Below are positions 1,793-59,100 of a stretch of DNA of 64,000 nucleotides, piece by piece (the first letter of the stretch is position 1; each line of letters opens with the position of its first letter). The notes under the pieces are model-generated. The model was given only the letters and a program-made list of their open reading frames with translations, had not been told where the DNA came from and did no database searches. The position numbers were made by a program, and so were the translations under genes. The stretch spans positions 62,001 to 126,000 of the IMG/VR virus record IMGVR_UViG_3300036944_001324. One strand, given 5' to 3'.

Positions 1793-1974
1793 GGACAACC
1801 TTTGTTTTTGACTTGAAAAAGACTGACAACGCTTTTACAACCGTATTTGTATTGTTGGTTATATCAGTCAAATACTCCACAATTGTCTGAGGAGTGCGTG
1901 ATTCTGGAAGTTTCATGCCCCTGGACGGTTCTTTTTCTTTTCTCTCATCTTTTTTCCTTGCAAGGATTTTCCCG

Positions 1975-19337: not shown

Positions 19338-19475
19338 GAGGTAGACGTGCTCCGAAATTGAATTAGTGGGCGACAACAGCGAAAGGCCCACACCTAGATC
19401 GCTATACGCAAAAAGAAAAGAAGCCAGGGTTTATCGCCCAGTGTCATAGTTATTTTTGATCGGCCTGACTGCTTA

Positions 19476-19522
19476 GACAACATAAAGAGGAGACCCTTGT
19501 GAGGTCTCCTCTTTTATGCCGT
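19476..19522. terminator. Hairpin of the CATA...TATGCCGT family
   Basis: GACAACATAAAGAGGAGACC-CTTGTGA-GGTCTCCTCTTTTATGCCGT. Confidence 0.8.
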
Positions 19523-43404: not shown

Positions 43405-45582
43405 TTAGTTACCACGTCCCGTGTCCTCGTACCACAGGTCAAGCAGGTTGACGATAGGAAGATCCCGAATAACGCCAGCCCAGTGTTCCTGGGAAGTGAG
43501 CATTCGAATGTCGCCACGCAACCAGTTCTTCACTCGCAGCTTGAGCTTTTGACCACGGTAGATCTGCTCGCCAAGCGTAGCAGAACCCAAAGTAGCCATG
43601 TAGTCTGAGTAAGTACTGTCATGAACGTTGATCGTCTCAAATGGATCAATAGAACCAATCTGGATAGGAACGTACATCACGGAAGACAGATCTTTCACAG
43701 AGAACTGCACGTCCACTGCCAGCATGTCTTTGTTCTTGGTAAACCCGAGATTAGAGACACCGCGAGTGATCTGCAGCGACTCAATGATACCGCACCGCGT
43801 AACAGCGCGACCTTGGTCGTACAGTTCGCACAGGAAAGGTTGCGTGTATGCTTGACGACCTGCGGCGTGCGGAAGCGCACCCGCCAAGATCATCGCCAGT
43901 GGGATGTAGATGTTGGTCAGCTGGGACACTGGATGACCGTAAGGGGCCACCAGACGCATGCTGTAGGTCTTGCTGGGCAGCGTTGCTACCGAGTTCTCCC
44001 AATGGTCAGGGATGTCTACATACGCACTACCCATCACGGACAAGAGTCCATCGATCTTGAGTGTGTGAAGAGCACCAGCGAGGAACTCTTTACCAGCGTC
44101 GACGATCATGCCTGCACCAGCACCGATATCACCACCTGCGAAGGTGTAGTAAGCGGCGCGCCCTTGTGCAGAAGTGCTGTTGAATTTCTGAGCCAGGTCA
44201 GACGGCTTGGTAGCGTTACTGAAAGACTCGCTCACGGAGCCAGTGTGGTCCACACGGAACGTAGCGAATGCAGAACCATCAGAAAACTCGGCATCCAAAA
44301 ATTCTTTAAATCCAGATATCTTGGACAAAAGCCGCTCACTCAGCGTCGGGTTGTAAGTCTTCTTGGCTTCTTTCTCAAGTTGCTCCTGAGATACGGCACC
44401 AGACTCACTGGCCAAGCGTTCTTCGAGCGTTCCCCCCATGATGGTTTCCATTTTGGGCTTTTCACTCTTTTCTTGGCTACCGCCTGTGAAGGAGTTCTTC
44501 CACTTGTTGATCAGCTCTTCAAGTGTGAGACCATTGTCATTGGTTTGTACGTTGTTGAATGCGCTTTGCATCGCGGATTGCAATTCTTCGTACGACGCAG
44601 CATTCTCGATAGCTTGTTTCTGTGCGTTCAAAAGACGCATGTTGATGCGTTCAACCCGGGTTACCAGATTCTTCACGTTGATGTAACCGGAATCGTCAAA
44701 AACACCCGGCAACAATTGCTTGATAGAGTCATGCATTTCTTTGTCGAACTGCTGCTCTTCACCGATGCGTTTGTCACCAGACTGGGTCGGGAACATGCCC
44801 TTATGGGTTGCCAGTTGGTTGACAATGGTCGTCACAGCCGACCAGTACACGGGCATGTTGGGTCGAGAGTAGTAGAACTTGGTGGGATTGGTTGTCAAGA
44901 TACCCTTGAGACCGCTTGCAATGTACGCTGCGGCCATGAGACCGAAGAACAACACACCACCCAAAGCTACAAAGCCAACTACAGCACCACCGACTTGACC
45001 CGCGGTGAAAGCCAGACCAGTCACACGACCAGAGTTCGCCAGATAGGCTGCACCCACGTCATAAAAACCAGTAAAGAAACTGATAAGCGAGTTGAACTCA
45101 GGCTTACCAAAACGCATGTGAATCACTTGGTAGCTATCGTCGATAGCTTCCGAGTAGTATGCGCCCATGCCTTGGTTGGTCATTCGGCTTGCAACCGTGA
45201 ATGCATTGCGATCAGGCACGAGACCGGGCTTAGGTGGATCGGCAAACGGCGTGAAGCCGGGTCGGGGATTACAAACGTAATTACCCCCGAGAGAAGTATC
45301 TTCAAACTTCCGATCCGCTGTGGAGTAAAAGCGATTTCGCTCGAACTCTTCTTCCAAGTAGAAGCCCTTGGCATACAGGGTCTCACTCACCCAGTGGTAA
45401 TCTTGGATTTGATCGACTTCGGAGTGAAGGAAGCGAGATCGCTTCTTCAGTAGTTCGTAAGCGCGCTTGGCGACTTCTTCAGAAGACACCCCTGGCAAGG
45501 CCTTGACTGCCTCACCACCTTCGGTGACGAACTTATCAGCCAGCTTGGCTTTGGTAGCCAGTTCTTCAAGAGAAAGAGTCAT
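43405..45582 (-). CDS. Virion structural protein downstream of the tape measure (phiKZ gp182-like, probable baseplate hub)
   Basis: 725 aa; DTSLGGNYVCNPRP...GMGAYYSEAIDD...HMRFGKPEFNSL; synteny with the gp181-like gene. Confidence 0.65.
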   Translation of the reverse strand: MTLSLEELATKAKLADKFVTEGGEAVKALPGVSSEEVAKRAYELLKKRSRFLHSEVDQIQDYHWVSETLYAKGFYLEEEFERNRFYSTADRKFEDTSLGGNYVCNPRPGFTPFADPPKPGLVPDRNAFTVASRMTNQGMGAYYSEAIDDSYQVIHMRFGKPEFNSLISFFTGFYDVGAAYLANSGRVTGLAFTAGQVGGAVVGFVALGGVLFFGLMAAAYIASGLKGILTTNPTKFYYSRPNMPVYWSAVTTIVNQLATHKGMFPTQSGDKRIGEEQQFDKEMHDSIKQLLPGVFDDSGYINVKNLVTRVERINMRLLNAQKQAIENAASYEELQSAMQSAFNNVQTNDNGLTLEELINKWKNSFTGGSQEKSEKPKMETIMGGTLEERLASESGAVSQEQLEKEAKKTYNPTLSERLLSKISGFKEFLDAEFSDGSAFATFRVDHTGSVSESFSNATKPSDLAQKFNSTSAQGRAAYYTFAGGDIGAGAGMIVDAGKEFLAGALHTLKIDGLLSVMGSAYVDIPDHWENSVATLPSKTYSMRLVAPYGHPVSQLTNIYIPLAMILAGALPHAAGRQAYTQPFLCELYDQGRAVTRCGIIESLQITRGVSNLGFTKNKDMLAVDVQFSVKDLSSVMYVPIQIGSIDPFETINVHDSTYSDYMATLGSATLGEQIYRGQKLKLRVKNWLRGDIRMLTSQEHWAGVIRDLPIVNLLDLWYEDTGRGN

Positions 45583-45736: not shown

Positions 45737-48700
45737 TTACGCCACGCGCCGCGTATCTACGATGGGTTCACTCACTTTACGAGGCCTGCGATCAGGCTGT
45801 GGTGATCCTGTTGAAGATGGAGCGGGTGGTGTTGCAGCTCCTGCGGTAGAAGCTGCTTCAGTTTGTTCACCTTGTTTGGCTATCATGAGATCCAAAATAC
45901 GCTGTTGGATATCACGCGACTCAATCAGGATTTTGTTAGTGTTACCGATACCATCAATGAGGTTCTTCTCATGGGTGCTGCGTGCACCCACTTCTGTATC
46001 CCGCGCATCTCGCTGCATGGCTGGTTGAACAGCCATCGGCATGAACGAAGGAGAACCAGAAGAAACTTGTCGCGGCTTAGGAGTCGTCTCTTCTTGCGAA
46101 GGACGGTACAGAGCGTTTTGCATGGTGGGTGCACCAGACTCAGAAGCAACACTCGTCGACGGGGAAGGTGTTGAAACACTTCCTGCCGAGTCATTGGCTG
46201 CTGGTGTAGTCGCCTTTGCCACCTGGGTAACGTTTCCTACATCGGGGGAGCCGATGCCGAACGCAGAAGCTGCTTTGGTCAGCTTGTTTTGCAGCAAAGT
46301 CATGATCTCTTGCTTCGTGCGTGGACGGCCACCATCGAAGAAGATCGACTTGTTAGCAGCCGCGGCTTCAGGCATTGCGTGAGCTGGCGTGACATTGTCA
46401 GCAAGACCCATGAAACGTCGACCACCGCCTGGGCCTAAGAAATGCAAGAGATAAGCACTCAGTGCATTCGCAGGCATGCCTGCCTTTTGTGCAGTCTGCA
46501 GATTTTGTTTCAAGTACAACGCACCCATGATGGCGTTGGCCTTAGGGTCGTTTGGAGAAGCATCGGCGGGAATGCCGTAGCTTGCACCATGCTTCTTGAC
46601 CATGTCGTTCCAAGTTCCCTTGGTAAACTGGTACAAACCCTTGGCGCTCGATGTTCCAGCAGCAGCGCCAGACTTGAAGCTGCTTTCAACAGCAACTGTT
46701 GTCTGGGCCAAGTTGGGATCAACACCCACTTGGGCAGCAGCATCCGCTACCAGCTTCTTCATGTCGGCAACTGAACTACCACCACCCTTGAGGTCTTGGT
46801 AGCCACCGCCCTTGCCTTCGTAGTTGTTCAGTGCGGTTTGAGCTTGGCCAGCTGGCGAACCTTTGAGCTTTGGAGAGCCTTCAAAGTCAGGCAGACTTCC
46901 ACCACCGGAGCCACCAATGCTTCCAGCAGAACCGGAAGCAGTAACTTCCGCACCGATCTGAGCAGCACCACCTGCGTAACCACCCTTGCCTGTCATGCTT
47001 GGCGTAGCGGCGGAGCGACTAGCATCTCCTTCGCGATCGCTCTTGATGGTCTCACCACCTGCATTGAACAAAGCCAAAGCGTGATCCGTGTTACGGCGAC
47101 CATGGGCGTACAGACCCTTAGCCCGACCAACACCACCACCGCCTTTACCGGGGGAGTGAGAAACAGCCATGGTTGCAGCCATGCCGTCTTTCTTGTACTT
47201 GTTGACGTTGTCTTGAATACCAGCTGGCTCGATGTGCCAAGGCTCACCACCGACGGGTCGGGTGAAACCATACTTGCGCATGAGACCAAGCTTATCAAGT
47301 GCGTTAGCGTCGATAGAGTTAATGTCAAAAGCCAGTCCGTACTCATGCAGGCTTGTACCTGGTCGAGCAGCGTTTTCTGGATTGTTCATGTACTCACGCT
47401 GTTGATCAGCGAATGAACGCATGCCGGCGTTCAGTTGTATCTTCTTACCTGTGATGGTTCCGTACTCTTCCACCATGCCTCGGAACAGCTTTACAGCCTC
47501 CGGGTTAGCTCCGTCGAGGGTTGCACCGCTATGATACTTGAGGAATGCCTCAGCACCGGAGCCGTTCATCAGGTCACCGCCAGCTACCTTGAGGGAGCCA
47601 GTCGATGGGGGTGCAGAAGTCTTTTCTGTTTTGGCAGGGCCGCCAGAACTACCAGCGTTTGCTTTAGCGTCCGATTCCATGTCTGGAAGAACGTTAGCTT
47701 GGTACGCTGGTTTGGCGCCAGCCATCTGGGGTGTGTCCGGACGATACACTGCACGCAGCATCTGCGGAGTTTGTGTAGGTGTCGTGCTAGCAGGTGAGGA
47801 TTTTACCTTCTCCTCTTGGATGGTCTGCTTTTCTGCACGTTCTTTCAAGAGTTCCACGAACGGCTTGATAGAGACCGTGGTTTCGCTCAGTGTGTAGCCT
47901 GGCCAAGGAGAAGCCGAGACTTTCATCACTTGGCTAGCGATGGCCATCATGGCGTTAGCCACTGCCTCGCTTTGGGTCGGTGTCAATGCAGCGTTAGCGG
48001 CTGCAAGATCTTTGGTTTGTGTGTGGAAACACGCCTGCGCGTAGAACGTCGTAAAGACAGGCAAGAAACGAGACTGGAACCAGGTTACCCAGTTATCCAC
48101 AGCCCGAGTGTTATCCTTATCGACACCAAACAAACCGTTGACAATCGTCAGTACTTTGCTAGGGTCACCCGTGAACGTAGCGACGCCCTCAGAGGACAGA
48201 TCGATTTGTTTTTGAACATGGGCTTCGAGACTGTTCAAAGAAGCCACCTTGTTAGGCTGTACGTCCATGATCCCGTACAGACGGAAACGAATCGATGCCA
48301 ATGCGTCGACGCTCTTGCTTGGCAAGGGTTCGATGTTGCTGGTGCTGTAAGTGATACCTTGACCGCCAAGAACAGAAACGTCTTTGGATGCGTCGTTCTT
48401 GTAAGCGTTCAGCTGGTTGTGCTGACTCTTCATGTCGACGTAGTCTTTCATGCCTGCCTTACCAGCGGCAGCTCCACCCTTGGATTGATCCTGGGCAGAT
48501 TTCAAGACGGCATCTACTTCTTTGCGTTTCATGTCGCCCTTGCTGGTTTCCAGCGCGAGCTTTTCCGTCTTGGAAGCCTTGGAAGCTTTTTCTTCCAGCA
48601 TCTTGCCAAGTACTTCTTTCATGTCGCGAATAGCTGCACCGTTAACGCTCAGGTCGTTACCAGAGCCGAACGGATTAGACAACTCGTCATGACCCTCGGA

Positions 48701-51700
48701 CACCGCAGTAACTGCTTTGAAGAAAGCCAGCTCATTGGAAGGTTTGAGGTTGTCAATGTCTGCCATCTTCTTGAGATCGGCGGTCTTTGCAGCCGCAGCA
48801 TGTTTCAAGAAGTTGGGTTTGAAGCGACGCTCGAGCCAACGCGAGAACGTTGCGAGCTGCTGTTCGTTATCAACGTCAATGCGAAAACGTGTTACGATTT
48901 CTTGGGCATCGATTTTGGATTCGTCGATAGAAGCTTTACCTTCATCGAGCTTGACGAATGGGAAGAGGTATTCTTCCAGCCACTGCAGAGTAGCAATAGG
49001 TCCGGTATCACCCATACCTACGCCGTACTCGGCCATCCGCAATGCACGCAGGTTGCCACTGCCCTTGGCTTTGACAGGTTCAGTGTTGTCACCCTTGACC
49101 AGATCGTAGAGTTCTTTCAAACCCCACACAGCACCAGCCACAGTCAATGCAGTCGCGACGATAGGTGCACCCAAAAGCGCAGCCACACCTGCCAGAGCAG
49201 GAATAGCAAGGCGTTTCAGAGCGAAGCCACCTACGGCCATCGCACCTCGGCCGAGACCAGCGGCGCCACCCATGCGTGCGCCGACTCCAGCAGCAGTGCG
49301 GACACCAGCCTTACCCCACGTACCGATTTTGGAAGCAGCACGGCTGAAGATACCTGGCTTACCACCAGGCTTACCACCCTTACCGCCTTTACCCCCTCCG
49401 CCTCCGAACATGTCAGCAATACCGCTGGCCAAACCAGCGAGCATCCCACCTTTACTGGTGAGGCTATTGATGATCATGTCGATGGTGTTCTCAGTACCCA
49501 TGGAGCCGGGCTTTTGAACATCGCTCAGGTCTTTGGTGGGTTCATTGATGTTGCGTTGTTTGTTCTTGAGATCCTGCCAAGAGTTATCACGCAGGCCATC
49601 GCCGTCTGTGTCACCCTTAGCACCGGCAGCGCCAGCCACAGCTGCTTTACCGGAATAACGTGCTTTAGCGTTATTGAACTTCTCTTTCGCGCCACCCATG
49701 AAGCGCTTGAACAGAGATTTGTTTTGTTTCTTGAGTTCGTCAATTTCTCGAGTGGTTTTCTCTTGACCGTCTTTAACGGCTTCTTTGACGTCAGCGGTGT
49801 CACCAGTTGCACCCGTACCACCCAGAGCGCCTAAGCCTTTGCGCTTAGAACGCCAGCGACTGAATGCGCTACCGATTGCAGAAGCTCCTGCGCCTACTGC
49901 CTTACCAGCAGCTGACAACAAGTTGGTTCCACCGTCGTAGTCGCGGTTCGTTGCAGGAGGTTCACCGGGTGCGGCAGGGCCATTGTTGTTTGTGTTGGGA
50001 GCGTCAGCTGCTTTAGCGATGGTCGCCAAAGGGCCACCAGAGGAGCTTTGTGGCAAACGAGAATCCAGGATGTCTCGAATTTGTTCCAGTACGGAATGGC
50101 TTTGTTCAGAGATCTGAATCTGAGAAGTAGCTTCTCCACCAGGACCACCGTTGTTACGGAAACCGCTCAACCCCTTAGTGACGAACGTTTTGGCTGCAGA
50201 ACCAATGCCACTGAGAACCTTCTTAGATTTCTTGGCAATCCAGGCAGTGGTGCGAACGGCAGAGACAGCGCGTTTGCGCATACCTTCGGCAATCTGCTGG
50301 GTAATAGTCTTGAATGGGTTGCCGTCTTCATCGACCAGACCTTTGACCAGATCTTCGATGCTGATCTTTGTTTCGTTGGTAGCGTCTACAACTTCGCCTT
50401 TGATCTTCGTTGGTCGATCAATCACTGAACCGTCGGACTTGTTGAGATAGCCACCGAGACGCATCACGTGAGCGTACAGTCGTGGTGTTGCCTCACCCTT
50501 GACGTAAACGTCGCGAGGAGGAATCAATACTTCTTTGAGGATGGCTTTGCCGAAGTTACCAACCATGCCGAGTTTGCGTTTGGCAAACAAAGCGGTTTGT
50601 CCGGTAACGTTCAGCAAACGACCAAGGCCTTTACCTGCGGCAGTCATGGCGCGCTGGACACGGTCAGCGAATACCCGTGCAAAGATCTTGGCGTTGCTCT
50701 TAACGTAAGCTTTCTTGAGCTCAGAAGGAGAAAGAATGTACTTGCCGTTTTCATCGAAGACACCTTCTACAGCGTCGGCGACGGCCATCAAGGTACTAAG
50801 GACCTTGCCTTTAGCGTCAAAGTAGGCGCCGGCTTGTAGGCCTTCCGACGTGATGCGGGGAGCCTTCTCATTACCAACAAAGAGTTCACCGATAACGGGG
50901 ATTCCGTCTTTGAGGTCCTGGAACATGCGAGCGCCAAAGAGGCGGCTCTTGGAAGCTTTGTCAGCGGCTTCTTCAACCACCTTCGAACCCACGCGCTTAC
51001 CCAGGCGGGCAACAGCTTTACCGCGGTTCCAACCACCACGCAGTTTGTCCTTGAACTTGCCAAGGTTCTCACCCATCGTGCTGTTCCAAAAGCCCTTGAC
51101 TTTGTCTTTGGCTTGGTCGGCGTAACCTGCGGCTTGTTCTGCAAACGCGTTGGCTTTCTCGGAAGCAGCTTTGCCAAAACCACCCATGCTAAAGCCACCA
51201 CCTGACTTGCCACCGCCGGAGCCACCGAAACCACCGCCACGCTCCATGCTTTCAGCGATCATGGACAGAACGCCGTACTGACGCTCTGCGATGTGAACCA
51301 GCTTTTGCAGGTTACCCATGCCTTTGGTGTCACCGAGCTCTTTGTCGATACGGTCTTGCAGGCCTTGGATGCCTGCCATCGCGATACCGTTCATGCTCGT
51401 GAGGTCGATCTTCTTGCCACCAGGGGCAGCTTCTTCACCGAACTCTTTGTTAACGTCCTGGGCCATCGGGCCGACCTTGGGTGACTGATCATCACTCTCG
51501 GTCTTTTTGTACTTCCAACGACTGATCGTGATCTTCTTGAGTTTCTCAAGAATAGATGCAGGATTCATTGGCTTGATACCGTCCTTGGCAAAGAAGTCGC
51601 TCTTGACGACCTTACCACCACCCAAGGCAGTTTCAATGATCTTGTCCAGGTCGATGTCAGACTGGTCCGCATCGAGTTCGTTGGCTTTGGTGAAGCCCAT

Positions 51701-53581
51701 CTCGTCCATGATGCTACCGTGACCTTCATTGAAAGCATTTTGAATAGCTGCTCGTGGATCTTTCAACCCACTCTTAGCCTCGCCCATGCTGTCGATGAAC
51801 TTGTTGCGTGCGCGCAAAGCTTTGCCAGTCCCGGAGAACTTGCCTGCTTCTTTGCTGTCGAAGAAAGCCTGCATGGCGCGTGCCACGGCTTCAGCTTCTT
51901 CTTTGGAGCCAGTGCCTTTCCAAAAGCCAGCTTCCGTCATCCGTTGGGGCGTCATAGAAGAGCCAGTGATCTGACCCTTGAGCAAAGAACGCTTGAGGCG
52001 CTCTTGTGCTTCTTGACTCAAGTCAGAACCAGAAGCGACTTCTGATACGAACTTGTCCATTGCACCGCCACTGCGCTGACCTTCCGAGAAGCGTTTGTTG
52101 TATTTCTTGATCAGATCGTCTTTGCTAGCAAAACCAGCTTTGTCGTGATCGTAGTACGTAAGGCCGATCTTGGTGTCACCCGTGCGTGCGATTTGCAGCT
52201 CTTGCAAGATCCGTGCAAGGTAGCCCGGCATCACCTCGGTGATAGAGCGCTTGTATGCGTTATCCAGTTCGGCTGGTTGCTTGAGGTTCTCCCCGCCCTT
52301 CTCTTTGGCAATACGTCGTTCGTTATTGCGGGCAGGCACCATCATCGAGGCAAGACCACGCAGAACCTGCATGGTGGTGCTCTCGTCCATCTCGCCACCG
52401 AATGCAAAGTCACGCAGCTCAGCGTCGCCGTTTTGCATGACGTTTTTAAGGGTGGAAGCACCCTTTTGAATCGCTCGATTGGCTTTGCGGTTACCGCGGG
52501 TGATCTTGCGGATCTTGCCGCCTGCGATGTCATCAAAGACACCCAGACCAAACTTGGTAGCACCTTCGGCGATCTGCCTGCGACGACGAACTGCTGGATC
52601 TTCATCATCAAGGTCCATGTCCATGTCAGAAGCCATGGTTGCCCCTTGGAGTCCCATGACAACATAGTCAGTCATTTCCTTGAGCGACTTGGCAAACTGG
52701 TTGCTCGCTGCTTGGAAGATGTTATCACCACCGGCACTGAACTTACCCAAGGCCTTGTCAACGAACTGGTTCTTCGCGTTGTTGACGAAGCGTTCAGTGA
52801 TACGGATCTTCTCAGACTCTGGAAGGCCGGTGTTGTGTCGGATCTGATCGAGCTGAGTACGGTTTTGTGCGATCAGCATGCGCAGCTGCTCGTTGGTATC
52901 CCTGATACCGAAGACCATGCGGTACTGCAGCTCCAGGCTCTTCTTTTGATAAGCCTGGGTAATACCTACCGTGTGCTTAGCGAGGATGTCGCTAGAGCGA
53001 GCGATAGTGTTGAGCAAGTTCGTATGCGTTTTGAAACGAACAAGCTCAGCGGTCTTTTCGATGTTGGCTTTGGCTTCGTCTTGCTCACGCTCATGTTGAC
53101 GTACATCGTCCTGAGCTGAAAACATCTGCTCCAAGGAAGCCGCAATGGCGCGATCTTCTTCGGCTTGTTTGTTGAACTTTTCAGCCTTGTAACCCCGAGT
53201 GTTTTCTTCAAGGTAGTCAACCAGCTTGAGCGTGCGGCGCATTTTCTGCGGAATCTTGTTACGAATCGACTTGGCGAATTCGTTAACAGGCTCGCGTGCA
53301 GTGTTCTTGAACTCGTTGACAGCATTCGCGATGGTGTCACGTGTTCCAGTATAGGTGTCGAAAGCTTCCCCGTATTCAGCAGGAAGAGCTTTACCCACCA
53401 GACGACGCAGAGTCTGCTCGTCAGAGTAGTGGGCTTTTGCAGCGGTGGCGATTCCTTTGCGGATCGTCTTGGCCGGGCTTCTGTCTTTCGGGTCAGTTTC
53501 CCCGAAGTCAAAGTCACCCATTCCGAAGTCCATATCATCGAACTCCGTAGGCCCGCGCTTGAGCCGATCAGATTTTATCAT
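45737..53581 (-). CDS. Tape-measure / virion lytic protein (phiKZ gp181-like) with internal S74-like domain, M15 peptidase and lytic transglycosylase
   Basis: 2614 aa, mostly helical and A/G/K-rich. SLT domain (AAQVGVDPNLAQTTVAVESSF...SAKGLYQFTKGTW) at about 46290-46760. M15 domain (NAGMRSFADQ...ARPGTSLHEYGLAFDI...GGEPWHI) at about 47225-47450. Next to the virion RNAP genes as in phiKZ. Confidence 0.88.
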   Translation of the reverse strand: MIKSDRLKRGPTEFDDMDFGMGDFDFGETDPKDRSPAKTIRKGIATAAKAHYSDEQTLRRLVGKALPAEYGEAFDTYTGTRDTIANAVNEFKNTAREPVNEFAKSIRNKIPQKMRRTLKLVDYLEENTRGYKAEKFNKQAEEDRAIAASLEQMFSAQDDVRQHEREQDEAKANIEKTAELVRFKTHTNLLNTIARSSDILAKHTVGITQAYQKKSLELQYRMVFGIRDTNEQLRMLIAQNRTQLDQIRHNTGLPESEKIRITERFVNNAKNQFVDKALGKFSAGGDNIFQAASNQFAKSLKEMTDYVVMGLQGATMASDMDMDLDDEDPAVRRRRQIAEGATKFGLGVFDDIAGGKIRKITRGNRKANRAIQKGASTLKNVMQNGDAELRDFAFGGEMDESTTMQVLRGLASMMVPARNNERRIAKEKGGENLKQPAELDNAYKRSITEVMPGYLARILQELQIARTGDTKIGLTYYDHDKAGFASKDDLIKKYNKRFSEGQRSGGAMDKFVSEVASGSDLSQEAQERLKRSLLKGQITGSSMTPQRMTEAGFWKGTGSKEEAEAVARAMQAFFDSKEAGKFSGTGKALRARNKFIDSMGEAKSGLKDPRAAIQNAFNEGHGSIMDEMGFTKANELDADQSDIDLDKIIETALGGGKVVKSDFFAKDGIKPMNPASILEKLKKITISRWKYKKTESDDQSPKVGPMAQDVNKEFGEEAAPGGKKIDLTSMNGIAMAGIQGLQDRIDKELGDTKGMGNLQKLVHIAERQYGVLSMIAESMERGGGFGGSGGGKSGGGFSMGGFGKAASEKANAFAEQAAGYADQAKDKVKGFWNSTMGENLGKFKDKLRGGWNRGKAVARLGKRVGSKVVEEAADKASKSRLFGARMFQDLKDGIPVIGELFVGNEKAPRITSEGLQAGAYFDAKGKVLSTLMAVADAVEGVFDENGKYILSPSELKKAYVKSNAKIFARVFADRVQRAMTAAGKGLGRLLNVTGQTALFAKRKLGMVGNFGKAILKEVLIPPRDVYVKGEATPRLYAHVMRLGGYLNKSDGSVIDRPTKIKGEVVDATNETKISIEDLVKGLVDEDGNPFKTITQQIAEGMRKRAVSAVRTTAWIAKKSKKVLSGIGSAAKTFVTKGLSGFRNNGGPGGEATSQIQISEQSHSVLEQIRDILDSRLPQSSSGGPLATIAKAADAPNTNNNGPAAPGEPPATNRDYDGGTNLLSAAGKAVGAGASAIGSAFSRWRSKRKGLGALGGTGATGDTADVKEAVKDGQEKTTREIDELKKQNKSLFKRFMGGAKEKFNNAKARYSGKAAVAGAAGAKGDTDGDGLRDNSWQDLKNKQRNINEPTKDLSDVQKPGSMGTENTIDMIINSLTSKGGMLAGLASGIADMFGGGGGKGGKGGKPGGKPGIFSRAASKIGTWGKAGVRTAAGVGARMGGAAGLGRGAMAVGGFALKRLAIPALAGVAALLGAPIVATALTVAGAVWGLKELYDLVKGDNTEPVKAKGSGNLRALRMAEYGVGMGDTGPIATLQWLEEYLFPFVKLDEGKASIDESKIDAQEIVTRFRIDVDNEQQLATFSRWLERRFKPNFLKHAAAAKTADLKKMADIDNLKPSNELAFFKAVTAVSEGHDELSNPFGSGNDLSVNGAAIRDMKEVLGKMLEEKASKASKTEKLALETSKGDMKRKEVDAVLKSAQDQSKGGAAAGKAGMKDYVDMKSQHNQLNAYKNDASKDVSVLGGQGITYSTSNIEPLPSKSVDALASIRFRLYGIMDVQPNKVASLNSLEAHVQKQIDLSSEGVATFTGDPSKVLTIVNGLFGVDKDNTRAVDNWVTWFQSRFLPVFTTFYAQACFHTQTKDLAAANAALTPTQSEAVANAMMAIASQVMKVSASPWPGYTLSETTVSIKPFVELLKERAEKQTIQEEKVKSSPASTTPTQTPQMLRAVYRPDTPQMAGAKPAYQANVLPDMESDAKANAGSSGGPAKTEKTSAPPSTGSLKVAGGDLMNGSGAEAFLKYHSGATLDGANPEAVKLFRGMVEEYGTITGKKIQLNAGMRSFADQQREYMNNPENAARPGTSLHEYGLAFDINSIDANALDKLGLMRKYGFTRPVGGEPWHIEPAGIQDNVNKYKKDGMAATMAVSHSPGKGGGGVGRAKGLYAHGRRNTDHALALFNAGGETIKSDREGDASRSAATPSMTGKGGYAGGAAQIGAEVTASGSAGSIGGSGGGSLPDFEGSPKLKGSPAGQAQTALNNYEGKGGGYQDLKGGGSSVADMKKLVADAAAQVGVDPNLAQTTVAVESSFKSGAAAGTSSAKGLYQFTKGTWNDMVKKHGASYGIPADASPNDPKANAIMGALYLKQNLQTAQKAGMPANALSAYLLHFLGPGGGRRFMGLADNVTPAHAMPEAAAANKSIFFDGGRPRTKQEIMTLLQNKLTKAASAFGIGSPDVGNVTQVAKATTPAANDSAGSVSTPSPSTSVASESGAPTMQNALYRPSQEETTPKPRQVSSGSPSFMPMAVQPAMQRDARDTEVGARSTHEKNLIDGIGNTNKILIESRDIQQRILDLMIAKQGEQTEAASTAGAATPPAPSSTGSPQPDRRPRKVSEPIVDTRRVA

Positions 53582-53848: not shown

Positions 53849-55852
53849 ATGTCTTCCAAAATTCCGTTTAACATCAAACTGCTACAGCTTGACGCTAAAG
53901 CTACGGTGGCGCTCAAACCTATCACAACGAACGACACGTTCGAAGGAGCCACCCGCAACTTTCACCCCAGTGGTTTGTTCTCAGTGAACATCTTTGGTCG
54001 TGTGGGTGATCCCTCACGGATGAAGAGTTTCGCCTACATCGACATCAAGGTACCGATCTTGCACCCCTTGGTGGTGCGGGTACTTGGCAAACTCAAACGC
54101 ATCTATCCTGAGATTCTCATGGGTAAGACCTACGCGGTCTGGGATGCAACACTCAAAGACTTCGTCAAAAGTGACATGCTCTCTGGTGAGACAGGTTATC
54201 ACTTCTTCATGCAGCACTTTGAGAAGATCCAGTTCCCGCAGCGCCTGTCCGATATTCGTGAACTGAACATCAAGTTCATCGAGAAGGTGCGTGGCGTGAA
54301 TGCGACGACTGAACGCATCATCGTTGCCCCGGCTGGTTTCCGTGACTTCATCATCCATGCGGATGACCGTGAAGAAGAAGACGAGGTCAATGCCCTGTAC
54401 CGCAAGATGCTGTCGGTCTCCAACCCGATCAGTCGCAGCGCTTTTGAAGCATCTCCCAAGACGTTCGATAAAGCACGCGCTTCCTTGCAATCGACCTTCA
54501 TCGAGATCTTCGAGTATTTCGAGAAAATGGTGGAAGGCAAGAACAAGCTTTTCATGGGTAAGTGGTTGACTCGTGAGATCGCTTACGGCACTCGTAACGT
54601 GATCACTACGCAGAACCTGCCTGTCAAGAAGCTCTTCGCCCCCGACTCACCCGGTTTCAACCACACGGGGATTGGCTTGTTCCAATACCTCAAAGCTTAC
54701 CAGCCTGTTTGTATTCACCAAGTTCGTGAAAACTTCATCTCCAAGGTGTTCACGACCCCGCAAGCTCCTGCGCTGCTGGTGAACATGAAGACGCTTCACA
54801 CCGAACGGGTGTTGGTGGACTCTGAACACTTCGACAGTTGGATGACACCTGAAGGCTTGGAGCGTATCTTCAACCTCTACGGTGAGGAAAGCGTTCGCCA
54901 TGAGCCTATCGTGATCGAAGGCCGCTACCTGGGTCTCATCTACAACGACGGCAAAGGCTTTAAGCTTTTCCAAGACATCGACGAGCTTCCAGAAGGTGCA
55001 GACCCTAAGTTCGTGAAACCCATCACGCTGTCTGAGCTGTTCTACATTGCCGTGTACCAATACACGGAAAACTACATCCTGAACGTTACCCGTTTTCCTG
55101 TGACGGGTTTTGGTTCGATCTATCCAAGCATCCCTTACCTGAAACCAACGATGGCGACGGTGAGTTTGCAACCGATGAACGATCAATGGGAGTTTGATGA
55201 GCAGCAACCTATTGCTTACAACTTCCCGGTCCGCGATAGTGCGTTCGTTAATACCCTGATGCCCGCACCAAACAAGCTCGGTGGGCTTAACGCCGACTTT
55301 GACGGGGACAAATGCACAGGCATGGGTATCTTCTCGCTGGAAGCTTGCGAAGAAGGTCGTCGCGTTCTGAAGAGCCGTAACTTCTACGTTCTCTCAAACG
55401 GCAAGATCGCCCACTCACTGAACACAGACACCGTCAAATACCTGATGCGCGGCCTTACCAGCAAGCCCCAGGCTTATCCGGTAACGGAAGCTTACCGGGA
55501 AGAAAATGACTCCACGTTCGAGCACTATGGTGAAGTGTTCAGCATCAACAAAGTGCACGAGATCATCGAGAAAAAGAAACTCGAGATTACTTATCTGAAT
55601 GCAAACAAGTCTTTGGCTTGGTTGCTCGATGTGCAAGACCGCAAAGGTCTGAAGTACGAAACGTTGGCTGATCCCGAACGGATCAAGAATGCGGATACCG
55701 AAACACCACTGATCGTGATCGATGACCCGCGCTGTGATTTGGTCGTGGCTGATGGTTTGCATCGGTTGGTCAAGGCTGTTCGTATTGAACACCGCACCAT
55801 GGTTCCTTGTTACGTCCTCAAATACTCGGACATTGCTTCCGCCCGTGTTTGA
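53849..55852 (+). CDS. rpoC: Virion RNA polymerase beta-prime catalytic subunit (phiKZ gp180-like) with C-terminal ParB/Srx-like domain
   Basis: HPSGLFSVNIFG, AYIDIKVPILHP, LNVTRFPVTG, and catalytic NADFDGD at 55289-55309. An extra ~120 aa carry PLIV...VVADGLHRLVKA. Confidence 0.9.
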   Translation: MSSKIPFNIKLLQLDAKATVALKPITTNDTFEGATRNFHPSGLFSVNIFGRVGDPSRMKSFAYIDIKVPILHPLVVRVLGKLKRIYPEILMGKTYAVWDATLKDFVKSDMLSGETGYHFFMQHFEKIQFPQRLSDIRELNIKFIEKVRGVNATTERIIVAPAGFRDFIIHADDREEEDEVNALYRKMLSVSNPISRSAFEASPKTFDKARASLQSTFIEIFEYFEKMVEGKNKLFMGKWLTREIAYGTRNVITTQNLPVKKLFAPDSPGFNHTGIGLFQYLKAYQPVCIHQVRENFISKVFTTPQAPALLVNMKTLHTERVLVDSEHFDSWMTPEGLERIFNLYGEESVRHEPIVIEGRYLGLIYNDGKGFKLFQDIDELPEGADPKFVKPITLSELFYIAVYQYTENYILNVTRFPVTGFGSIYPSIPYLKPTMATVSLQPMNDQWEFDEQQPIAYNFPVRDSAFVNTLMPAPNKLGGLNADFDGDKCTGMGIFSLEACEEGRRVLKSRNFYVLSNGKIAHSLNTDTVKYLMRGLTSKPQAYPVTEAYREENDSTFEHYGEVFSINKVHEIIEKKKLEITYLNANKSLAWLLDVQDRKGLKYETLADPERIKNADTETPLIVIDDPRCDLVVADGLHRLVKAVRIEHRTMVPCYVLKYSDIASARV

Positions 55853-55879: not shown

Positions 55880-56122
55880 ATGTCTGATACTCGTGTTTAT
55901 GTTCCTGCAGGTTCTGCGGGAGGCCACCCGGCTTTTGTGGAGCATGTTCCGTTGGGTCAAACCAATGCGAAGAACTTCGGCATTGCGGTTACTGCCCTTC
56001 GGCCCAACATCCCTGGCGTGGATCTGCGTCAAGTGCAAAGCGTCAACGGTGCAGCCGTTGACGTGGGTACTTCTGCAAACTACGTCGATATGAATCCCCG
56101 CACTCACGTGCTCAAGAAATGA
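55880..56122 (+). CDS. Small hypothetical protein between the two virion RNAP genes
   Basis: 80-84 aa; ATGA overlap with the beta subunit start. Confidence 0.6.
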   Translation: MSDTRVYVPAGSAGGHPAFVEHVPLGQTNAKNFGIAVTALRPNIPGVDLRQVQSVNGAAVDVGTSANYVDMNPRTHVLKK

Positions 56123-59100
56123 AACCATCTCAATCCATCGCGTCTTTGCTCGGTCGGGTAGATCCTTCTTTGGAAGTGATGATTACCCCCGAGCTGTTTC
56201 GCCGTCGTTTCGTTGTGTGGAAACCAGAACACCTGGTCATGCCACCAACACCGCTGATCAACCAGTTCGAGTTCCCCAACAACGCAGTCTATCACTACGT
56301 TGTCATGGACGGCATCCAAGAGGGCCCAAGCCCTACGGATGTGAAGCTCGCGACGATCGATAAAAAGATCACCATCGAAGCAGTCCGTCAGCTCACAAGC
56401 TCTGAAGGTAAACCAGCCCCGATTGCTGTCAACATCCAGTCGTCTGTTGACGCCTGGCACCGGTACAACAAACGTTTTCGCAAATCGCGCGATGCGGTGG
56501 CAGAAGCTCCTAGCGAGCAGACACTGGCCATCATCAACTACGCGTTCTTGCCGCAGCTGTACCGCTACACCCGCTCGATCTACACGGATCGGTATCGCTG
56601 GGTGAATACCTGGGCCACTGTGTTCAACAAGATCAATGAGATCTCCCAGACCACCACCCGCACGAACTTCATCTTCGTGGACATGCCGCAGCAACTACCG
56701 TCCATGCAGCGTCTGGAAGCGCTGACAGACAAACCTGATGCAATGATCGTGCGTACGCTTCCAACTCCAGAAGACTGGATGCTCTACGAACTGTGGAAAT
56801 GGGTTGATCCTGAAAAGCGTGGTACTAGCTTGCTCAACCGGATCGATCCACTGCACTACGACAAGGTCCGACTGGTGATCCAAGACGCTGGTCGTTTCAT
56901 CTGCTTGGACTTGGGTCTTTTGAACCAATGGCTGCGCGATCCGACGGGTTCGAAAGAATCTACCGGACGTCTGAAGCCAGTCGAGTTGCAAAAGCGTCTG
57001 CTGCGCGGCTTGATGGGGTTGATGCAAAATCGTGTTCCAGTCATTCTTGACGAGAACACTGGCGATATCGATCAAACAGCCATCGATGCACAACAGCAAC
57101 AAAACGATGCTTCTACATCGACTAACGTGGGTGACACGGAGACCACTGCGCAACGGGTTGAGCGTATCCTGGCCGAGCTCGATGACGACATCGCTCAACT
57201 GGACACGAACGACGCGCAGCGGATGAAGATGCTGGAAGAAGGCGCCATCAGTGCTTCACAACCGGCTTCCGTAGAAACTACGGAAGAAGTGAGCTTTGAC
57301 AAACCAGTTACGCCTGTTGACATGATCCGCAAGCAAGCGGACAACCTGGACAACATGGGTGTACTCGCACCGTCCGAGTACCGCAAGATCTTGCGTTTGC
57401 TTGATAACGGTCAGAAACTCAAAGACCCCTTCGGCGGTGACAAGACGCTGGTGGAGTTCGGTACGGTCACTCCTGATGAGACGCTCATCAAGAATGTTCA
57501 CCAGTTGCCTGACTCGGTAACAATCATCGACAAGAGCATGCGTGAGGCATCGCTCAAGGATTTCGACAGCAAGTACATCGATCAGTTCCTGCGACGCGAT
57601 ACCGTCGGATGCGTTGCCGCCATGCAAAAAGCAGGGATGATCATCTCTGACTATCAGGTAGAGGTCAACGAAGACGCTCTTGGTAAGTACGAACTTCACT
57701 CCGTTCGTTTCTCTCCACTGGTAGGCCTTCCTACCACGTTGCGCTTTAAGCTCCCTGTTCCGGACTCGTCTGGCAAGATCAAGAGCGGCGGTACGGATTA
57801 CCGTTTCCGCAAACAGCGTGTGGACGCCCCCATCCGCAAGATCTCAGCTTCCCGTGTGGCTATCTCTAGCTACTATGGCAAGAGCTTTGTGTCCCGTTCT
57901 GAACGCAGTACCTACGACTACGGCCGCTGGTTGCAACGTGAAGTCATGGTGCAGGTCATGGGTGAGAACCCAACCATCACCAACATCAAAACAGGTGACG
58001 TGTTCTACCGCGAATGCACAGGACCTCGTTCGTTCACGGCGATGTCTGAGCGCTATCGTGAGTTCACCTTCCAAGGCATCAACTTCAATTTTGATTGGAG
58101 CAAGCAAAAGGAAATCTTCGGTGATGAAGCTATTGCCGAAGCCAAGACTCAAAACCTGACCCTCTGCGGTAAAGACGCCAATGCTCTTTACGCAGTGGAT
58201 GTGAACAACACGCTGTACAAGGTGGAGCCTGGTAATTCCACACCTGTGGAGTCCTTTGAAGTGTTCCTTGGTCTGGAAGCTTTGCGTGCTCCCTTGGAGT
58301 TCACGGAATGCCGCATCATGGGCAAGAACATTCCCACTGGTGTTGTACTGGCTTACTACTACGGCCTGAGCACGCTGATCAAGATGCTGGGTGCATCGGT
58401 GCGACGTGTTGGCGCTGGGCAGCGTCAGAACCTGCAACCCAACGAATGGTCGGTAGCCTTCGAAGATGAAACTCTCATCTTCAACCGTGACGATCGTCTG
58501 GCCACGCTGATCTTGGCTGGTTTCCGCTCGGTTGAAAAGAGCACCAAGCGTTACTCGATCTACGCTTTCGACAAGCAAGCCGTATACCTGAACGTTCTTG
58601 AGCAGCAAGGTCTGTCCGTTCGTTACCTGCGTGAACTCGACAACCTGGACAAGCTCTTCGTTGATCCGATCACCGAACGCGTTCTCAAACGCATGGGTGA
58701 GCCTACAACCTACCGTGGCCTTATCAAGCGTGCATCTGAGATGCTGCTCCTTGACGAGCATCCCCGTTTGCTTGACGTCCGTTACATGCGCTGGCGCGGT
58801 ATGGAGCGTATCGCAGGTAGCGTCTACACTGAGATGGTGCGTTCTGTGCGTGAGCATGGTTCTTTGGCCGGTCGTAGCAACGCCCATTTGAAGCTGAACG
58901 TCTACAGTGTCTGGAAAGCCGTGATGCAGGATCAGTCCATGACACAAGTCAAGGACATCAATCCCATCAACGACCTCAAGGAAATCGAAGCCACGACCTA
59001 CGCAGGTGCTGGTGGTCGCTCCAGCCGTTCGCTCACACGCTCTGCACGTTACTTCGATCCAACTGACCTGGGTGTTACCTCGGAAGCCACCTCGGACTCC

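What the first reader, a model, noticed from the sequence alone, without database searches (positions are those of the whole stretch)
51330..51601. Self-cleaving intramolecular-chaperone (Peptidase_S74-like) domain inside the tape-measure protein
Seen: at aa ~661-750 of 2614, K-SDFFAKDGIKPMNPASILEKLKKITISRWKYKKTESDDQSPKVGPMAQDVNKEFGEEAAPGGKKIDLTSMNGIAMAGIQGLQDRIDKEL. This follows the ICA/S74 consensus SDxxxKxxI...L..L....W.YK...(H/V)GPMAQD....FG...I......AIQ.L plus a coiled coil, with the Ser and the +5 Lys of the catalytic dyad intact. Established: ICA domains normally sit at the extreme C-terminus of tailspikes and fibres, drive trimerisation and then autocleave at that Ser; an internal position is known in the eukaryotic factor MYRF. 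Inference: this tape measure may trimerise through the ICA and cut itself into a ~660-aa N-fragment and a ~1950-aa C-fragment carrying the lytic domains, i.e. an assembly-coupled or ejection-priming maturation independent of the prohead protease. I do not know of this architecture being described for a tape measure.
Basis: partly seen in the sequence, partly recalled or inferred. Interest (0 to 1): 0.8.

Follow-up and report, generated by a model that had tools for sequence, protein, structure and literature searches.

The report
Self-cleaving chaperone domain inside giant tail lysin
A giant tail-associated cell-wall-digesting protein of an uncultured phiKZ-like jumbo phage carries, in its middle, a well-conserved copy of the self-cutting folding domain that normally sits at the very end of phage tail fibres. 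This suggests the protein trimerises and cuts itself in two, an arrangement seen in over 150 uncultured relatives but in none of the 11 cultured ones tested.

Summary
The minus-strand ORF 45737-53581 (2614 aa) is the orthologue of phiKZ gp181. At aa 661-750 it contains a genuine Peptidase_S74 intramolecular chaperone domain (ICD): Pfam E=4e-8, above the gathering score. A family profile matches solved ICDs (MYRF ICA, phi29 gp12, a tail fibre), and the AlphaFold model retrieves ICD structures as its top ten hits.

Ser661, Asp662, Lys666 and GPMAQD are invariant in 43 orthologues that average 29% column identity. SDxxxK is kept in 109 of 111 further giant homologues. The domain always sits at one module junction, which is a low-complexity linker in all 11 cultured chimalliviruses tested; none of these has the domain.

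Where kept, it is as conserved as the two lytic domains (72-73% against 45% overall). In the nearest relatives that lost the Ser, the whole domain has decayed.

Best reading (about 0.6): ICD-driven trimerisation, then self-cleavage between K660 and S661. This is inferred, not shown.

The "tape measure" label is plausible but unproven; recent phiKZ and Goslar virion structures do not place gp181. I found no prior description. I rate it a new variant of a known kind.

The parts
45737..53581 (-). Whole gene: 2614-aa orthologue of phiKZ gp181 (virion-associated peptidoglycan hydrolase, candidate tape measure)
   Evidence: ORF. PHROG 3201 matches aa 15-1990 with E=3.8e-248. tblastn gives 25-29% identity to the gp181 orthologues of Eowyn, RSF1, Goslar, PhiPA3 and others. 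Synteny of vRNAP beta, gp181, gp182 matches phiKZ and six other isolates.
52322..53476 (-). N-terminal long-helix region (aa 36-420)
   Evidence: The AF2 model of aa 1-760 shows helices of up to 66 residues, at low to moderate pLDDT.
51617..52264 (-). Alpha/beta module (aa 440-655) directly upstream of the cut site; end of the family-wide N-terminal homology block
   Evidence: pLDDT 73-85. BLASTP blocks to every ICD-less orthologue end at query aa 630-657.
51599..51604 (-). Predicted scissile bond, K660|S661 (Ser661 is the nucleophile)
   Evidence: S661 is invariant in 43 orthologues. It aligns to the first residue (Ser) of the phi29 gp12 ICD chain in 3GUD, which starts with SD, and to the corresponding position (an Ala in the crystallised chain) of MYRF 7DC3. 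Model confidence dips below 50 at aa 656-662. Cleavage itself is inferred.
51584..51586 (-). Lys666, putative general base of the Ser-Lys dyad (Ser +5)
   Evidence: Invariant in 43 orthologues. SDxxxK is kept in 109 of 111 further giant homologues.
51332..51601 (-). Intramolecular chaperone domain (Peptidase_S74-like), aa 661-750
   Evidence: Pfam PF13884 covers aa 661-716. The profile matches PDB entries 8JOV, 7DC3 and 3GUD. The AF2 core has pLDDT 92-96. The top ten Foldseek hits are all ICDs.
51455..51472 (-). Invariant GPMAQD motif (aa 704-709); counterpart of the G-x-I-A-Q motif of solved ICDs
   Evidence: Invariant columns; alignments to 8JOV, 7DC3 and 3GUD.
51332..51403 (-). C-terminal long helix of the ICD (aa 727-750), presumed trimeric coiled coil
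   Evidence: Helix 108-131 of the model. It is retained even in the decayed copies in P0003 and P0004.
51170..51235 (-). Gly-rich linker (aa 783-804) after the ICD
   Evidence: Read directly from the sequence; 23 Gly in aa 701-800.
49118..49240 (-). Hydrophobic, transmembrane-like segment (aa 1448-1488)
   Evidence: Kyte-Doolittle 19-residue peak of 2.17, the only segment above 1.4. An equivalent peak is present in 170 of 182 giant family members at a median relative position of 0.62.
47204..47503 (-). VanY/peptidase M15-like cell-wall peptidase domain (aa 2027-2126)
   Evidence: Pfam PF02557 at E=4e-4, which is below the gathering score. PHROG 13118 'endolysin' at E=2.8e-16. PF02557 is precomputed for many orthologues.
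46451..46750 (-). Lytic transglycosylase (SLT) domain (aa 2278-2377)
   Evidence: Pfam PF01464 at E=1.7e-9; PHROG 4067.
43405..45582 (-). Downstream neighbour: orthologue of phiKZ gp182, the hexameric 'spacer' ring under the tail-tube initiator
   Evidence: PHROG 3181 at E=3.9e-179. Same position as gp182 in phiKZ. Role of gp182 from PMC13250141.

Best explanation
The gene encodes the phiKZ-gp181-type giant tail lysin of an uncultured phiKZ-like jumbo phage. At the junction between its conserved N-terminal module (aa 1-655) and the rest of the protein, a canonical intramolecular chaperone domain (aa 661-750) replaces the unstructured linker seen in cultured relatives.

Most likely mechanism: three nascent chains associate through the ICD, which nucleates trimer formation of the upstream module. 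Once the trimer forms, Ser661, activated by Lys666, cuts the K660|S661 bond. The product is an N-terminal fragment of about 660 aa and a C-terminal fragment of about 1954 aa. The C-terminal fragment starts with the ICD and carries a hydrophobic helix plus two cell-wall hydrolase domains (VanY-like and SLT).

Shown: domain identity, position, conservation of the dyad, and evolutionary behaviour.

Inferred: trimerisation, cleavage, and the fate of the two fragments.

Sub-confidences: true ICD 0.97; catalytically active self-cleavage about 0.65; the protein is the tail tape measure about 0.5.
For: 1. Pfam PF13884 scores above the gathering score.
2. A profile of 43 orthologous segments matches solved ICDs: 8JOV tail fibre C-terminus at 3e-5, MYRF ICA 7DC3 at 8.5e-5, and phi29 gp12 ICD 3GUD at 6e-3. 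The 3GUD chain begins exactly at the aligned Ser.
3. The top ten Foldseek hits of the AF2 model are all ICDs: 7DC3 prob 1.00, 3GUD prob 0.90, then 3GW6. The aa 1-760 model gives the same top hit.
4. S661, D662, K666 and GPMAQD are invariant at 29% mean column identity. SDxxxK is kept in 109 of 111 additional giant homologues.
5. Against P0006 and P0007 the ICD is 72-73% identical, while the whole protein is 45%. That equals the conservation of the enzymatic domains.
6. The pattern is all-or-none. In P0003, P0004 and P0005 (65%, 66% and 54% identical overall) the Ser is replaced by Ala, Ala and Thr, and the domain has collapsed to 17-32% identity with deletions. On the tree these are two independent decays within the query's own subclade. 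Once catalysis is lost, nothing preserves the fold.
7. The position is fixed at the end of the N-terminal homology block.
8. Between environmental strains the ICD shows few differences: two listed, both at third codon positions by my arithmetic. The roughly 110 nt just upstream in the protein show about 20.
Against: There is no protein-level evidence of cleavage or trimerisation, and every ICD-bearing member is uncultured.

The domain is dispensable for the family. Eleven cultured chimalliviruses lack it, and it was lost at least five times on the tree.

A conserved Ser-Lys could in principle serve structure only.

An ICD trimer may be too bulky for a tail-tube lumen. That is my own estimate and I did not compute it.

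The structural matches have modest TM-scores (0.43-0.52), because a monomer model is being compared with intertwined trimers.
Confidence: 0.6

Rival explanations
1. The ICD is a folding and trimerisation nucleus only. It brings three chains into register but does not cut, or cuts inefficiently, and the protein stays in one piece in the virion.
For: ICD-less orthologues work as single chains in cultured phages. The C-terminal helix of the domain survives even in the decayed copies in P0003 and P0004, which hints at a role independent of cleavage. From published work on endosialidase as I recall it, Ser-to-Ala ICD mutants still fold and trimerise.
Against: If only folding mattered, the Ser and Lys would be free to vary. 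Instead they are invariant in 43 orthologues, and the motif is kept in 109 of 111 more. Loss of the Ser coincides with decay of the whole domain.
Confidence: 0.2
2. The chemistry is the same but the biology differs. The protein is not a length-determining tape measure. It is an ejected tail or internal protein, and the cut frees the 660-aa N-terminal trimer so that it can travel into the cell separately from the membrane-inserting, wall-digesting C-terminal fragment, as in MYRF.
For: The order N-part, ICD, hydrophobic helix, C-terminal domains mirrors MYRF, and MYRF ICA is the best structural match. gp181 is not placed in the phiKZ or Goslar virion structures. No tape-measure family matches the protein.
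Against: Nothing shows that either fragment enters the cell. The N-terminal module has no recognisable enzymatic or DNA-binding domain. The gene sits next to the tube-base ring gene gp182, as a tape-measure gene would.
Confidence: 0.15
3. The domain is a neutral relic of a past recombination with a tail-fibre gene and has no present function.
For: Repeated loss and decay in several lineages. Closely similar C-terminal ICDs exist in small (about 240-430 aa) phage proteins that could have been donors.
Against: It is the best-conserved non-enzymatic segment of the protein in lineages that keep it. It is retained, with the dyad, in 157 diverged giant proteins.
Confidence: 0.03
4. Artefact: a chance motif, a misassembly, or two genes (a fibre with a C-terminal ICD plus a lysin) wrongly read as one.
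For: None found.
Against: The frame is open through all 2614 codons. Independent contigs from other samples bridge the site with no gap or joint. ICD-less orthologues are collinear on both sides of it. The HMM evidence is strong.
Confidence: 0.01

Closest known systems
C-terminal intramolecular chaperone domains of phage tailspikes and fibres (endosialidase endoNF, PDB 3GW6; phi29 gp12, 3GUD; T5 pb1; Pfam PF13884, MEROPS S74)
   Same: Same sequence family and fold. It has the same SDxxxK Ser-Lys motif, the G-x-(I/M)-A-Q motif and the terminal long helix. The closest sequence relatives outside the gp181 family are ordinary C-terminal ICDs of about 240-430-aa phage proteins, for example in Achromobacter phage CF418P1 and Agrobacterium phage Atu_ph08.
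   Different: Here 1864 residues follow the domain, so it is not the last 100-150 residues of the protein. The upstream partner is a helical plus alpha/beta module of a tail lysin, not a beta-helical fibre or spike. After a cut the ICD would stay attached to a large functional fragment and would not be discarded.
MYRF / MrfA ICA domain (eukaryotic membrane-tethered transcription factors; PDB 7DC3; PMC3742443, PMC3828593)
   Same: It is the only well-studied case of an internal ICD. The order is N-terminal cargo, ICD, hydrophobic helix, C-terminal region. It is the best structural match to the model (prob 1.00) and matches the profile at E=8.5e-5.
   Different: There is no NDT80-type DNA-binding domain. 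The hydrophobic helix lies about 700 residues after the ICD, not close to it. The context is a viral structural protein. Common descent of the whole architecture is not shown.
phiKZ gp181 and its orthologues in cultured chimalliviruses (PhiPA3 gp213, Goslar gp204, RSF1 ORF042 and others)
   Same: They are orthologous: same N-terminal module, mid-protein block, hydrophobic helix in most, and C-terminal SLT. The gene has the same position between the virion RNA polymerase beta subunit and gp182.
   Different: They have no ICD. Pfam finds nothing at E<=1 in four of them, and the family HMM finds nothing in eleven. The junction is a Gly/Pro-rich linker. phiKZ gp181 also lacks the VanY-like domain.
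Proteolytically processed tape measure proteins (lambda gpH to H*, T5 pb2). This comparison rests on my own knowledge; nothing about them was tested here.
   Same: They are long helical tail-lumen proteins, with hydrophobic segments and, in T5 pb2, a C-terminal muralytic domain. They are cut during maturation.
   Different: To my knowledge those cuts are near the C-terminus and are not made by an S74 domain. Here the predicted cut is a quarter of the way along the chain and is self-catalysed.

Membership tests
Peptidase_S74 / intramolecular chaperone domain (PF13884) | Match to the family HMM above the curated threshold | tested here: met
   33.9 bits against a gathering score of 22, E=4e-8, covering profile positions 1-55 of 58.
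Peptidase_S74 / intramolecular chaperone domain (PF13884) | Catalytic Ser with Lys five residues downstream | tested here: met
   S661 and K666 are present. Both are invariant in 43 orthologues, and the motif is in 109 of 111 further homologues.
Peptidase_S74 / intramolecular chaperone domain (PF13884) | Fold of solved ICDs | tested here: met
   The top ten Foldseek hits are all ICDs (7DC3 prob 1.00, 3GUD 0.90, 3GW6). TM-scores of 0.43-0.52 are modest, as expected when a monomer model is compared with intertwined trimers.
Peptidase_S74 / intramolecular chaperone domain (PF13884) | Location at the extreme C-terminus of a trimeric fibre or spike | tested here: not met
   The domain ends at aa 750 of 2614. 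This is the point of interest. MYRF shows that the feature is typical of the family, not obligatory.
Peptidase_S74 / intramolecular chaperone domain (PF13884) | Trimerisation-dependent self-cleavage at the Ser | not testable with these tools
   Needs expression with S661A and K666A controls. Only monomer prediction was available.
phiKZ gp181-type virion peptidoglycan hydrolase | Homology over the N-terminal and central modules, plus a C-terminal lytic transglycosylase | tested here: met
   PHROG 3201 at E=3.8e-248 and the SLT domain; BLASTP blocks to seven isolates.
phiKZ gp181-type virion peptidoglycan hydrolase | Conserved gene position between virion RNAP beta and gp182 | tested here: met
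phiKZ gp181-type virion peptidoglycan hydrolase | Presence in the virion and muralytic activity | not testable with these tools
   Known for phiKZ gp181 only (Briers 2008, as cited in PMC5380687).
Tail tape measure protein | Match to a described tape-measure family | tested here: not met
   No tape-measure family in Pfam or PHROGs matches.
Tail tape measure protein | Very long, mostly helical chain with hydrophobic segment(s) and optional C-terminal lysin | tested here: inconclusive
   Long helices at aa 36-420, but with low confidence. One conserved hydrophobic helix. Two lysin domains. These are compatible with a tape measure but not specific to one.
Tail tape measure protein | Gene adjacent to tube-base or hub genes | tested here: met
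   The next gene is the gp182 orthologue, the spacer ring under the tube initiator. In T4, gene 29 likewise precedes genes 48 and 54 (my own knowledge).
Tail tape measure protein | Lies in the tube lumen and sets tail length | not testable with these tools
   gp181 is not modelled or mentioned in the phiKZ atlas, and I found no mention of its Goslar orthologue or of a tape measure in the Goslar structure paper.
MYRF-type membrane-tethered factor | Internal ICD followed by a transmembrane helix | tested here: met
   ICD at aa 661-750; hydrophobic helix at aa 1448-1488.
MYRF-type membrane-tethered factor | NDT80-type DNA-binding domain upstream of the ICD | tested here: not met
   No such Pfam hit. 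Foldseek finds nothing for the N-terminal module. The protein works like MYRF at most; it is not a member.

The most novel reading that the evidence does not exclude
The ICD makes this giant protein a two-part delivery device. After self-cleavage, the C-terminal fragment (ICD, hydrophobic helix, two wall hydrolases) opens the envelope and inserts into the membrane. The freed 660-aa N-terminal trimer is released into the cell, or into the early infection vesicle of nucleus-forming phages. This would be a phage counterpart, and possibly an evolutionary precedent, of the MYRF mechanism of cutting to release cargo from a membrane tether.
Probability: 0.12. Interest if true: 0.85.

Novelty: new variant of a known kind. 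Interest (0 to 1): 0.6.

Why it matters
1. It predicts self-catalysed, protease-independent processing of the largest virion protein in a large, environmentally widespread but uncultured branch of phiKZ-like jumbo phages. Close relatives of this phage appear in wastewater, groundwater, river, soil, biofilm and gut metagenomes.

2. Among the cases I know of, it gives a second architectural context for an internal ICD besides eukaryotic MYRF, and this one is in a phage, the group from which the domain is thought to come.

3. The natural pairs with and without the domain form a ready-made comparison for asking what the cut is for. They include close relatives in which the domain decayed after loss of the Ser.

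4. It bears on annotation. Many gp181 orthologues are labelled 'tail fiber protein' in RefSeq and PHROGs, a label that the phiKZ and Goslar structures do not support.

5. The prediction can be tested quickly with one recombinant fragment and two point mutants.

Tried and rejected
- Megablast of the gene against 50,697 phage records found nothing, so the phage has no close cultured relative.
- tblastn of the ICD alone, even at E<=1, found no chimallivirus. It found only ordinary C-terminal ICDs in small phage proteins.
- A single-sequence search of solved structures gave only noise: RAD23B Gly-rich region and RbfA. The family profile was needed.
- I looked for a relic of the ICD in cultured phiKZ-clade orthologues. 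A small [F/V]-x-G-P motif is conserved in their linker and faintly recalls GPMAQD, but the ICD HMM gives no hit there. I do not claim it.
- P0044 and P0047 at first seemed to lack the dyad. They keep SDxxxK about 65 residues upstream, across an insertion.
- Foldseek on the N-terminal 660 residues gave no credible match other than the ICD.
- The ICD-only tree (99 columns) is too poorly resolved to prove a single capture. One origin is not excluded.
- Literature searches for a tape-measure assignment of gp181 or for an ICD in a tape measure found nothing. Thomas et al. 2012 on phiKZ proteolysis is not in the library.
- Source names for the NCBI-derived homologues are absent.
Full report
**1. The observation**

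The window carries a 2614-codon ORF on the minus strand, 45737..53581. Ser661 is at 51601-51599 and Lys666 at 51586-51584.

Pfam gives three hits:
- Peptidase_S74 (PF13884), aa 661-716, E=4e-8, 33.9 bits against a gathering score of 22, covering profile positions 1-55 of 58.
- SLT, aa 2278-2377, E=1.7e-9.
- A sub-threshold VanY hit, aa 2027-2094.

The VanY hit is backed by a PHROG 'endolysin' match and by precomputed PF02557 hits in many orthologues.

It is not an assembly artefact. A 6.2-kb contig from an independent wastewater sample spans 50400-52800 with 35 substitutions and no indel or joint. A groundwater contig bridges 51336-52102.

**2. What the gene is**

The window belongs to a phiKZ-like (chimallivirus-type) jumbo phage. 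It encodes the split virion RNA polymerase beta subunits (53849-55852 and 56119-60372), a phiKZ-type major head protein (1894-4116) and other signature families.

The ORF lies between the RNAP beta subunit gene and a gp182 orthologue (43405-45582). phiKZ gp181 occupies the same place, and so do its orthologues in Eowyn, RSF1, Goslar, PhiPA3, RP12 and Xoo-sp14. PHROG 3201 matches aa 15-1990 at E=3.8e-248. So this is the gp181 orthologue.

No cultured phage is close to it. Megablast finds nothing, and the best tblastn identities are 25-29%.

**3. Is the domain a true ICD?**

A single-sequence search of solved structures failed. I then aligned the region from 43 orthologues (alignment A1, mean column identity 29%). 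The invariant positions are S661, D662, K666, G704-P-M-A-Q-D709 and G715.

The profile matches several solved ICDs:

| PDB entry | Protein | E-value |
|---|---|---|
| 8JOV | tail fibre, C-terminal end | 3e-5 |
| 7DC3 | MYRF ICA domain | 8.5e-5 |
| 3GUD | phi29 gp12 chaperone | 6e-3 |

The deposited 3GUD chain begins at the aligned Ser.

An AlphaFold model of aa 620-790 has pLDDT 92-96 through the core. Its ten best Foldseek hits in the PDB are all ICDs: 7DC3 (prob 1.00), 3GUD (0.90) and 3GW6. TM-scores are only 0.43-0.52. That is expected when a monomer model is compared with chains from intertwined trimers. A second model of aa 1-760 again retrieves only MYRF ICA. I put the domain identity at about 0.97.

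**4. Distribution**

In the word-indexed search, 73 family members were found, and an HMM built from the ICD detects the domain in 46 of them, always at about aa 650-830 (one exception at about 1135).

The exhaustive profile search of 1.84 billion representatives gave 18,217 S74-like proteins. Of these, 191 score E<=1e-30. The best 150 are dominated by proteins of about 1500-3900 aa with the domain at about aa 620-900. Altogether I hold 157 giant proteins with an internal ICD and 14 short proteins with an ordinary C-terminal ICD of the same subtype. Of 111 newly found giants, 109 keep SDxxxK and the other two have TDxxxK and SExxxK. P0044 and P0047, which first looked dyad-less, keep the motif across a 65-residue insertion.

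No cultured chimallivirus has the domain:
- tblastn of the ICD against 50,697 phage records finds none, even at E<=1.
- The family HMM finds nothing in phiKZ, PhiPA3, Goslar, Eowyn, RSF1, RP12, Xoo-sp14, Noxifer, Phabio, Psa21 or PS119XW.
- Pfam finds nothing at E<=1 in four of them.

**5. Where it sits**

BLASTP of the query against every ICD-less orthologue gives an N-terminal block that ends at query aa 630-657. The next block starts at about aa 800-1018. In those proteins the interval is a Gly/Pro-rich, low-complexity linker. The ICD thus occupies a pre-existing module junction. It is an insertion into a continuous protein, not the seam of a gene fusion.

The aa 1-760 model shows the following:
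- long helices at aa 36-420, with low confidence;
- a better-defined alpha/beta module at aa 440-655;
- two short strands at aa 631-633 and 641-643;
- a confidence dip below 50 at aa 656-662, which is the predicted scissile site;
- the ICD after that.

Further downstream there is a single strongly hydrophobic segment at aa 1448-1488. It is conserved in 170 of 182 giant family members at a median relative position of 0.62.

**6. Evolutionary behaviour**

On a tree built from the N-terminal module alone, the ICD-bearing proteins fall mostly in one group of 52 rows (44 with the domain, 8 without). All seven cultured phages included in that tree lie outside it. At least 5-7 changes of state are needed.

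The query's own subclade is the most informative part:

| Comparison with the query | Overall identity | ICD identity | Residue at 661 |
|---|---|---|---|
| P0006, P0007 | 45% | 72-73% | Ser |
| P0003 | 65% | 29% | Ala |
| P0004 | 66% | 32% | Ala |
| P0005 | 54% | 17% | Thr |

- In P0006 and P0007 the ICD is as conserved as the VanY-like and SLT domains.
- In P0003, P0004 and P0005 the W-x-Y-K/GPMAQD core is also deleted.
- Given the tree, these are two independent decays.
- The pattern is all-or-none: strongly constrained with the dyad, free to rot without it. This is the best available indirect evidence that the value of the domain lies in catalysis.
- It also shows that the protein can function without the domain.

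Between environmental strains, the ICD shows two listed differences, both at third codon positions by my arithmetic. The roughly 110 nt encoding aa 618-654 show about twenty.

**7. Mechanism proposed**

By analogy with characterised ICDs (Schwarzer 2007 as cited in PMC7824862; PMC4690869; PMC3742443), three chains assemble through the ICD, the upstream module folds as a trimer, and Ser661 with Lys666 cuts the K660|S661 bond. This gives fragments of 660 and 1954 residues. Unlike in tail fibres, the ICD would remain at the head of a large functional fragment. None of these steps is shown here, and I put self-cleavage at about 0.65.

**8. Is it a tape measure?**

In favour:
- the size and the long helices;
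- the conserved hydrophobic helix;
- the C-terminal lysins;
- the neighbouring gene, gp182, which forms the hexameric spacer ring directly under the tube initiator in phiKZ (PMC13250141). In T4, the tape-measure gene 29 likewise precedes genes 48 and 54 (my own knowledge).

Against or unresolved:
- no tape-measure family matches;
- older work called gp181 a needle-like puncturing device (PMC5380687);
- the 2026 phiKZ atlas gives the spike, hub, tip, pin and tube-initiator rings to other proteins and mentions neither gp181 nor a tape measure;
- I found no mention of a tape measure or of the gp181 orthologue in the Goslar structure paper.

The old 'puncturing device' role is thus superseded, and the protein is simply unplaced. 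That is what one would expect of a disordered lumen protein, but it is not proof. I give the tape-measure reading about 0.5.

**9. Comparison with what is known**

The domain is a member of PF13884/S74, but it breaks the family's usual positional rule. The only well-studied internal ICD is in eukaryotic MYRF/MrfA, which shares the order cargo, ICD, hydrophobic helix. The phage protein lacks the NDT80 domain and is not a MYRF family member.

Iyer et al. 2021 surveyed jumbo phages and reported S74 domains only in 'group 2' phages, in a tail-fibre context. Searches combining gp181, tape measure, Peptidase_S74 and intramolecular chaperone found no description of this architecture. The precomputed Pfam labels in public protein collections already carry PF13884 for these proteins. 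The raw fact is therefore latent in databases, but it is undescribed and uninterpreted.

**10. Verdict**

I rate it a new variant of a known kind, with interest 0.6.

Noticed in passing
window 17490-19391, 19522-23505, 23618-25618 (all minus strand): Three adjacent large ORFs (633, 1327 and 666 aa) share one N-terminal domain (PHROG 2163 'virion structural protein', E down to 1e-56) and have different C-terminal parts. They look like a paralogous set of baseplate or fibre proteins with swapped distal domains.
   Followed up: no
phiKZ gp181 and orthologues in RefSeq (L004:13335-20048, and loci L006-L009 and L012-L014): Many gp181 orthologues are labelled 'tail fiber protein' in RefSeq and in PHROG 3201. 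The phiKZ and Goslar virion structures give no support for this. The label may have spread from family members that carry the S74 domain, which is usually read as a tail-fibre marker.
   Followed up: partly
L004 (phiKZ gp181 about aa 720-730) and the same linker in PhiPA3, Phabio, Psa21, PS119XW, P0070 and P0071: Seven of the eight aligned proteins share a small conserved [F/V]-x-G-P motif in the otherwise variable linker after the N-terminal module; Noxifer does not. phiKZ reads HFIGPMYQ, which faintly recalls the H-x-GPMAQD core of the ICD. The ICD HMM gives no hit there, so whether it is a relic is open.
   Followed up: partly
P0036-P0040, P0045, P0048 (about aa 660-800); P0044 and P0047 (aa 747-902): One subclade has a 30-65-residue insertion between the catalytic SDxxxK helix and the rest of the ICD. 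If these still cleave, the dyad helix and the core tolerate a long spacer.
   Followed up: partly
P0153, P0165, P0166, P0177, P0188, P0192, P0198 (about 300-430 aa); L001:5215-6402; L002:5197-6357: Small phage proteins with an ordinary C-terminal ICD score almost as well against the gp181 ICD profile as the giants do (E about 1e-34 to 1e-36). The two from cultured phages (Achromobacter CF418P1 and Agrobacterium Atu_ph08, genomes of about 58 kb) lie in structural gene clusters. They are possible donors of the domain.
   Followed up: partly
window 47204-47503 versus L004 (phiKZ gp181): The window protein and many uncultured orthologues carry a VanY/peptidase-M15-like domain in addition to SLT. 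phiKZ gp181, Eowyn and RSF1 show only SLT, and Goslar shows a weak chitinase-class-I-like hit in place of SLT. The lytic end of the protein is modular.
   Followed up: no
window 50800-52400: Near-identical or related sequence is present in runs labelled shale gas, wastewater, biofilm, groundwater, river, soil and chicken gut metagenomes. The phage lineage is environmentally widespread although uncultured.
   Followed up: partly
window 51620-51730 (aa about 618-654): The segment encoding the last roughly 40 residues before the ICD carries a dense cluster of about 20 strain differences shared by three other samples. The ICD just after it is almost invariant. This could be a recombination boundary or a relaxed linker.
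   Followed up: no
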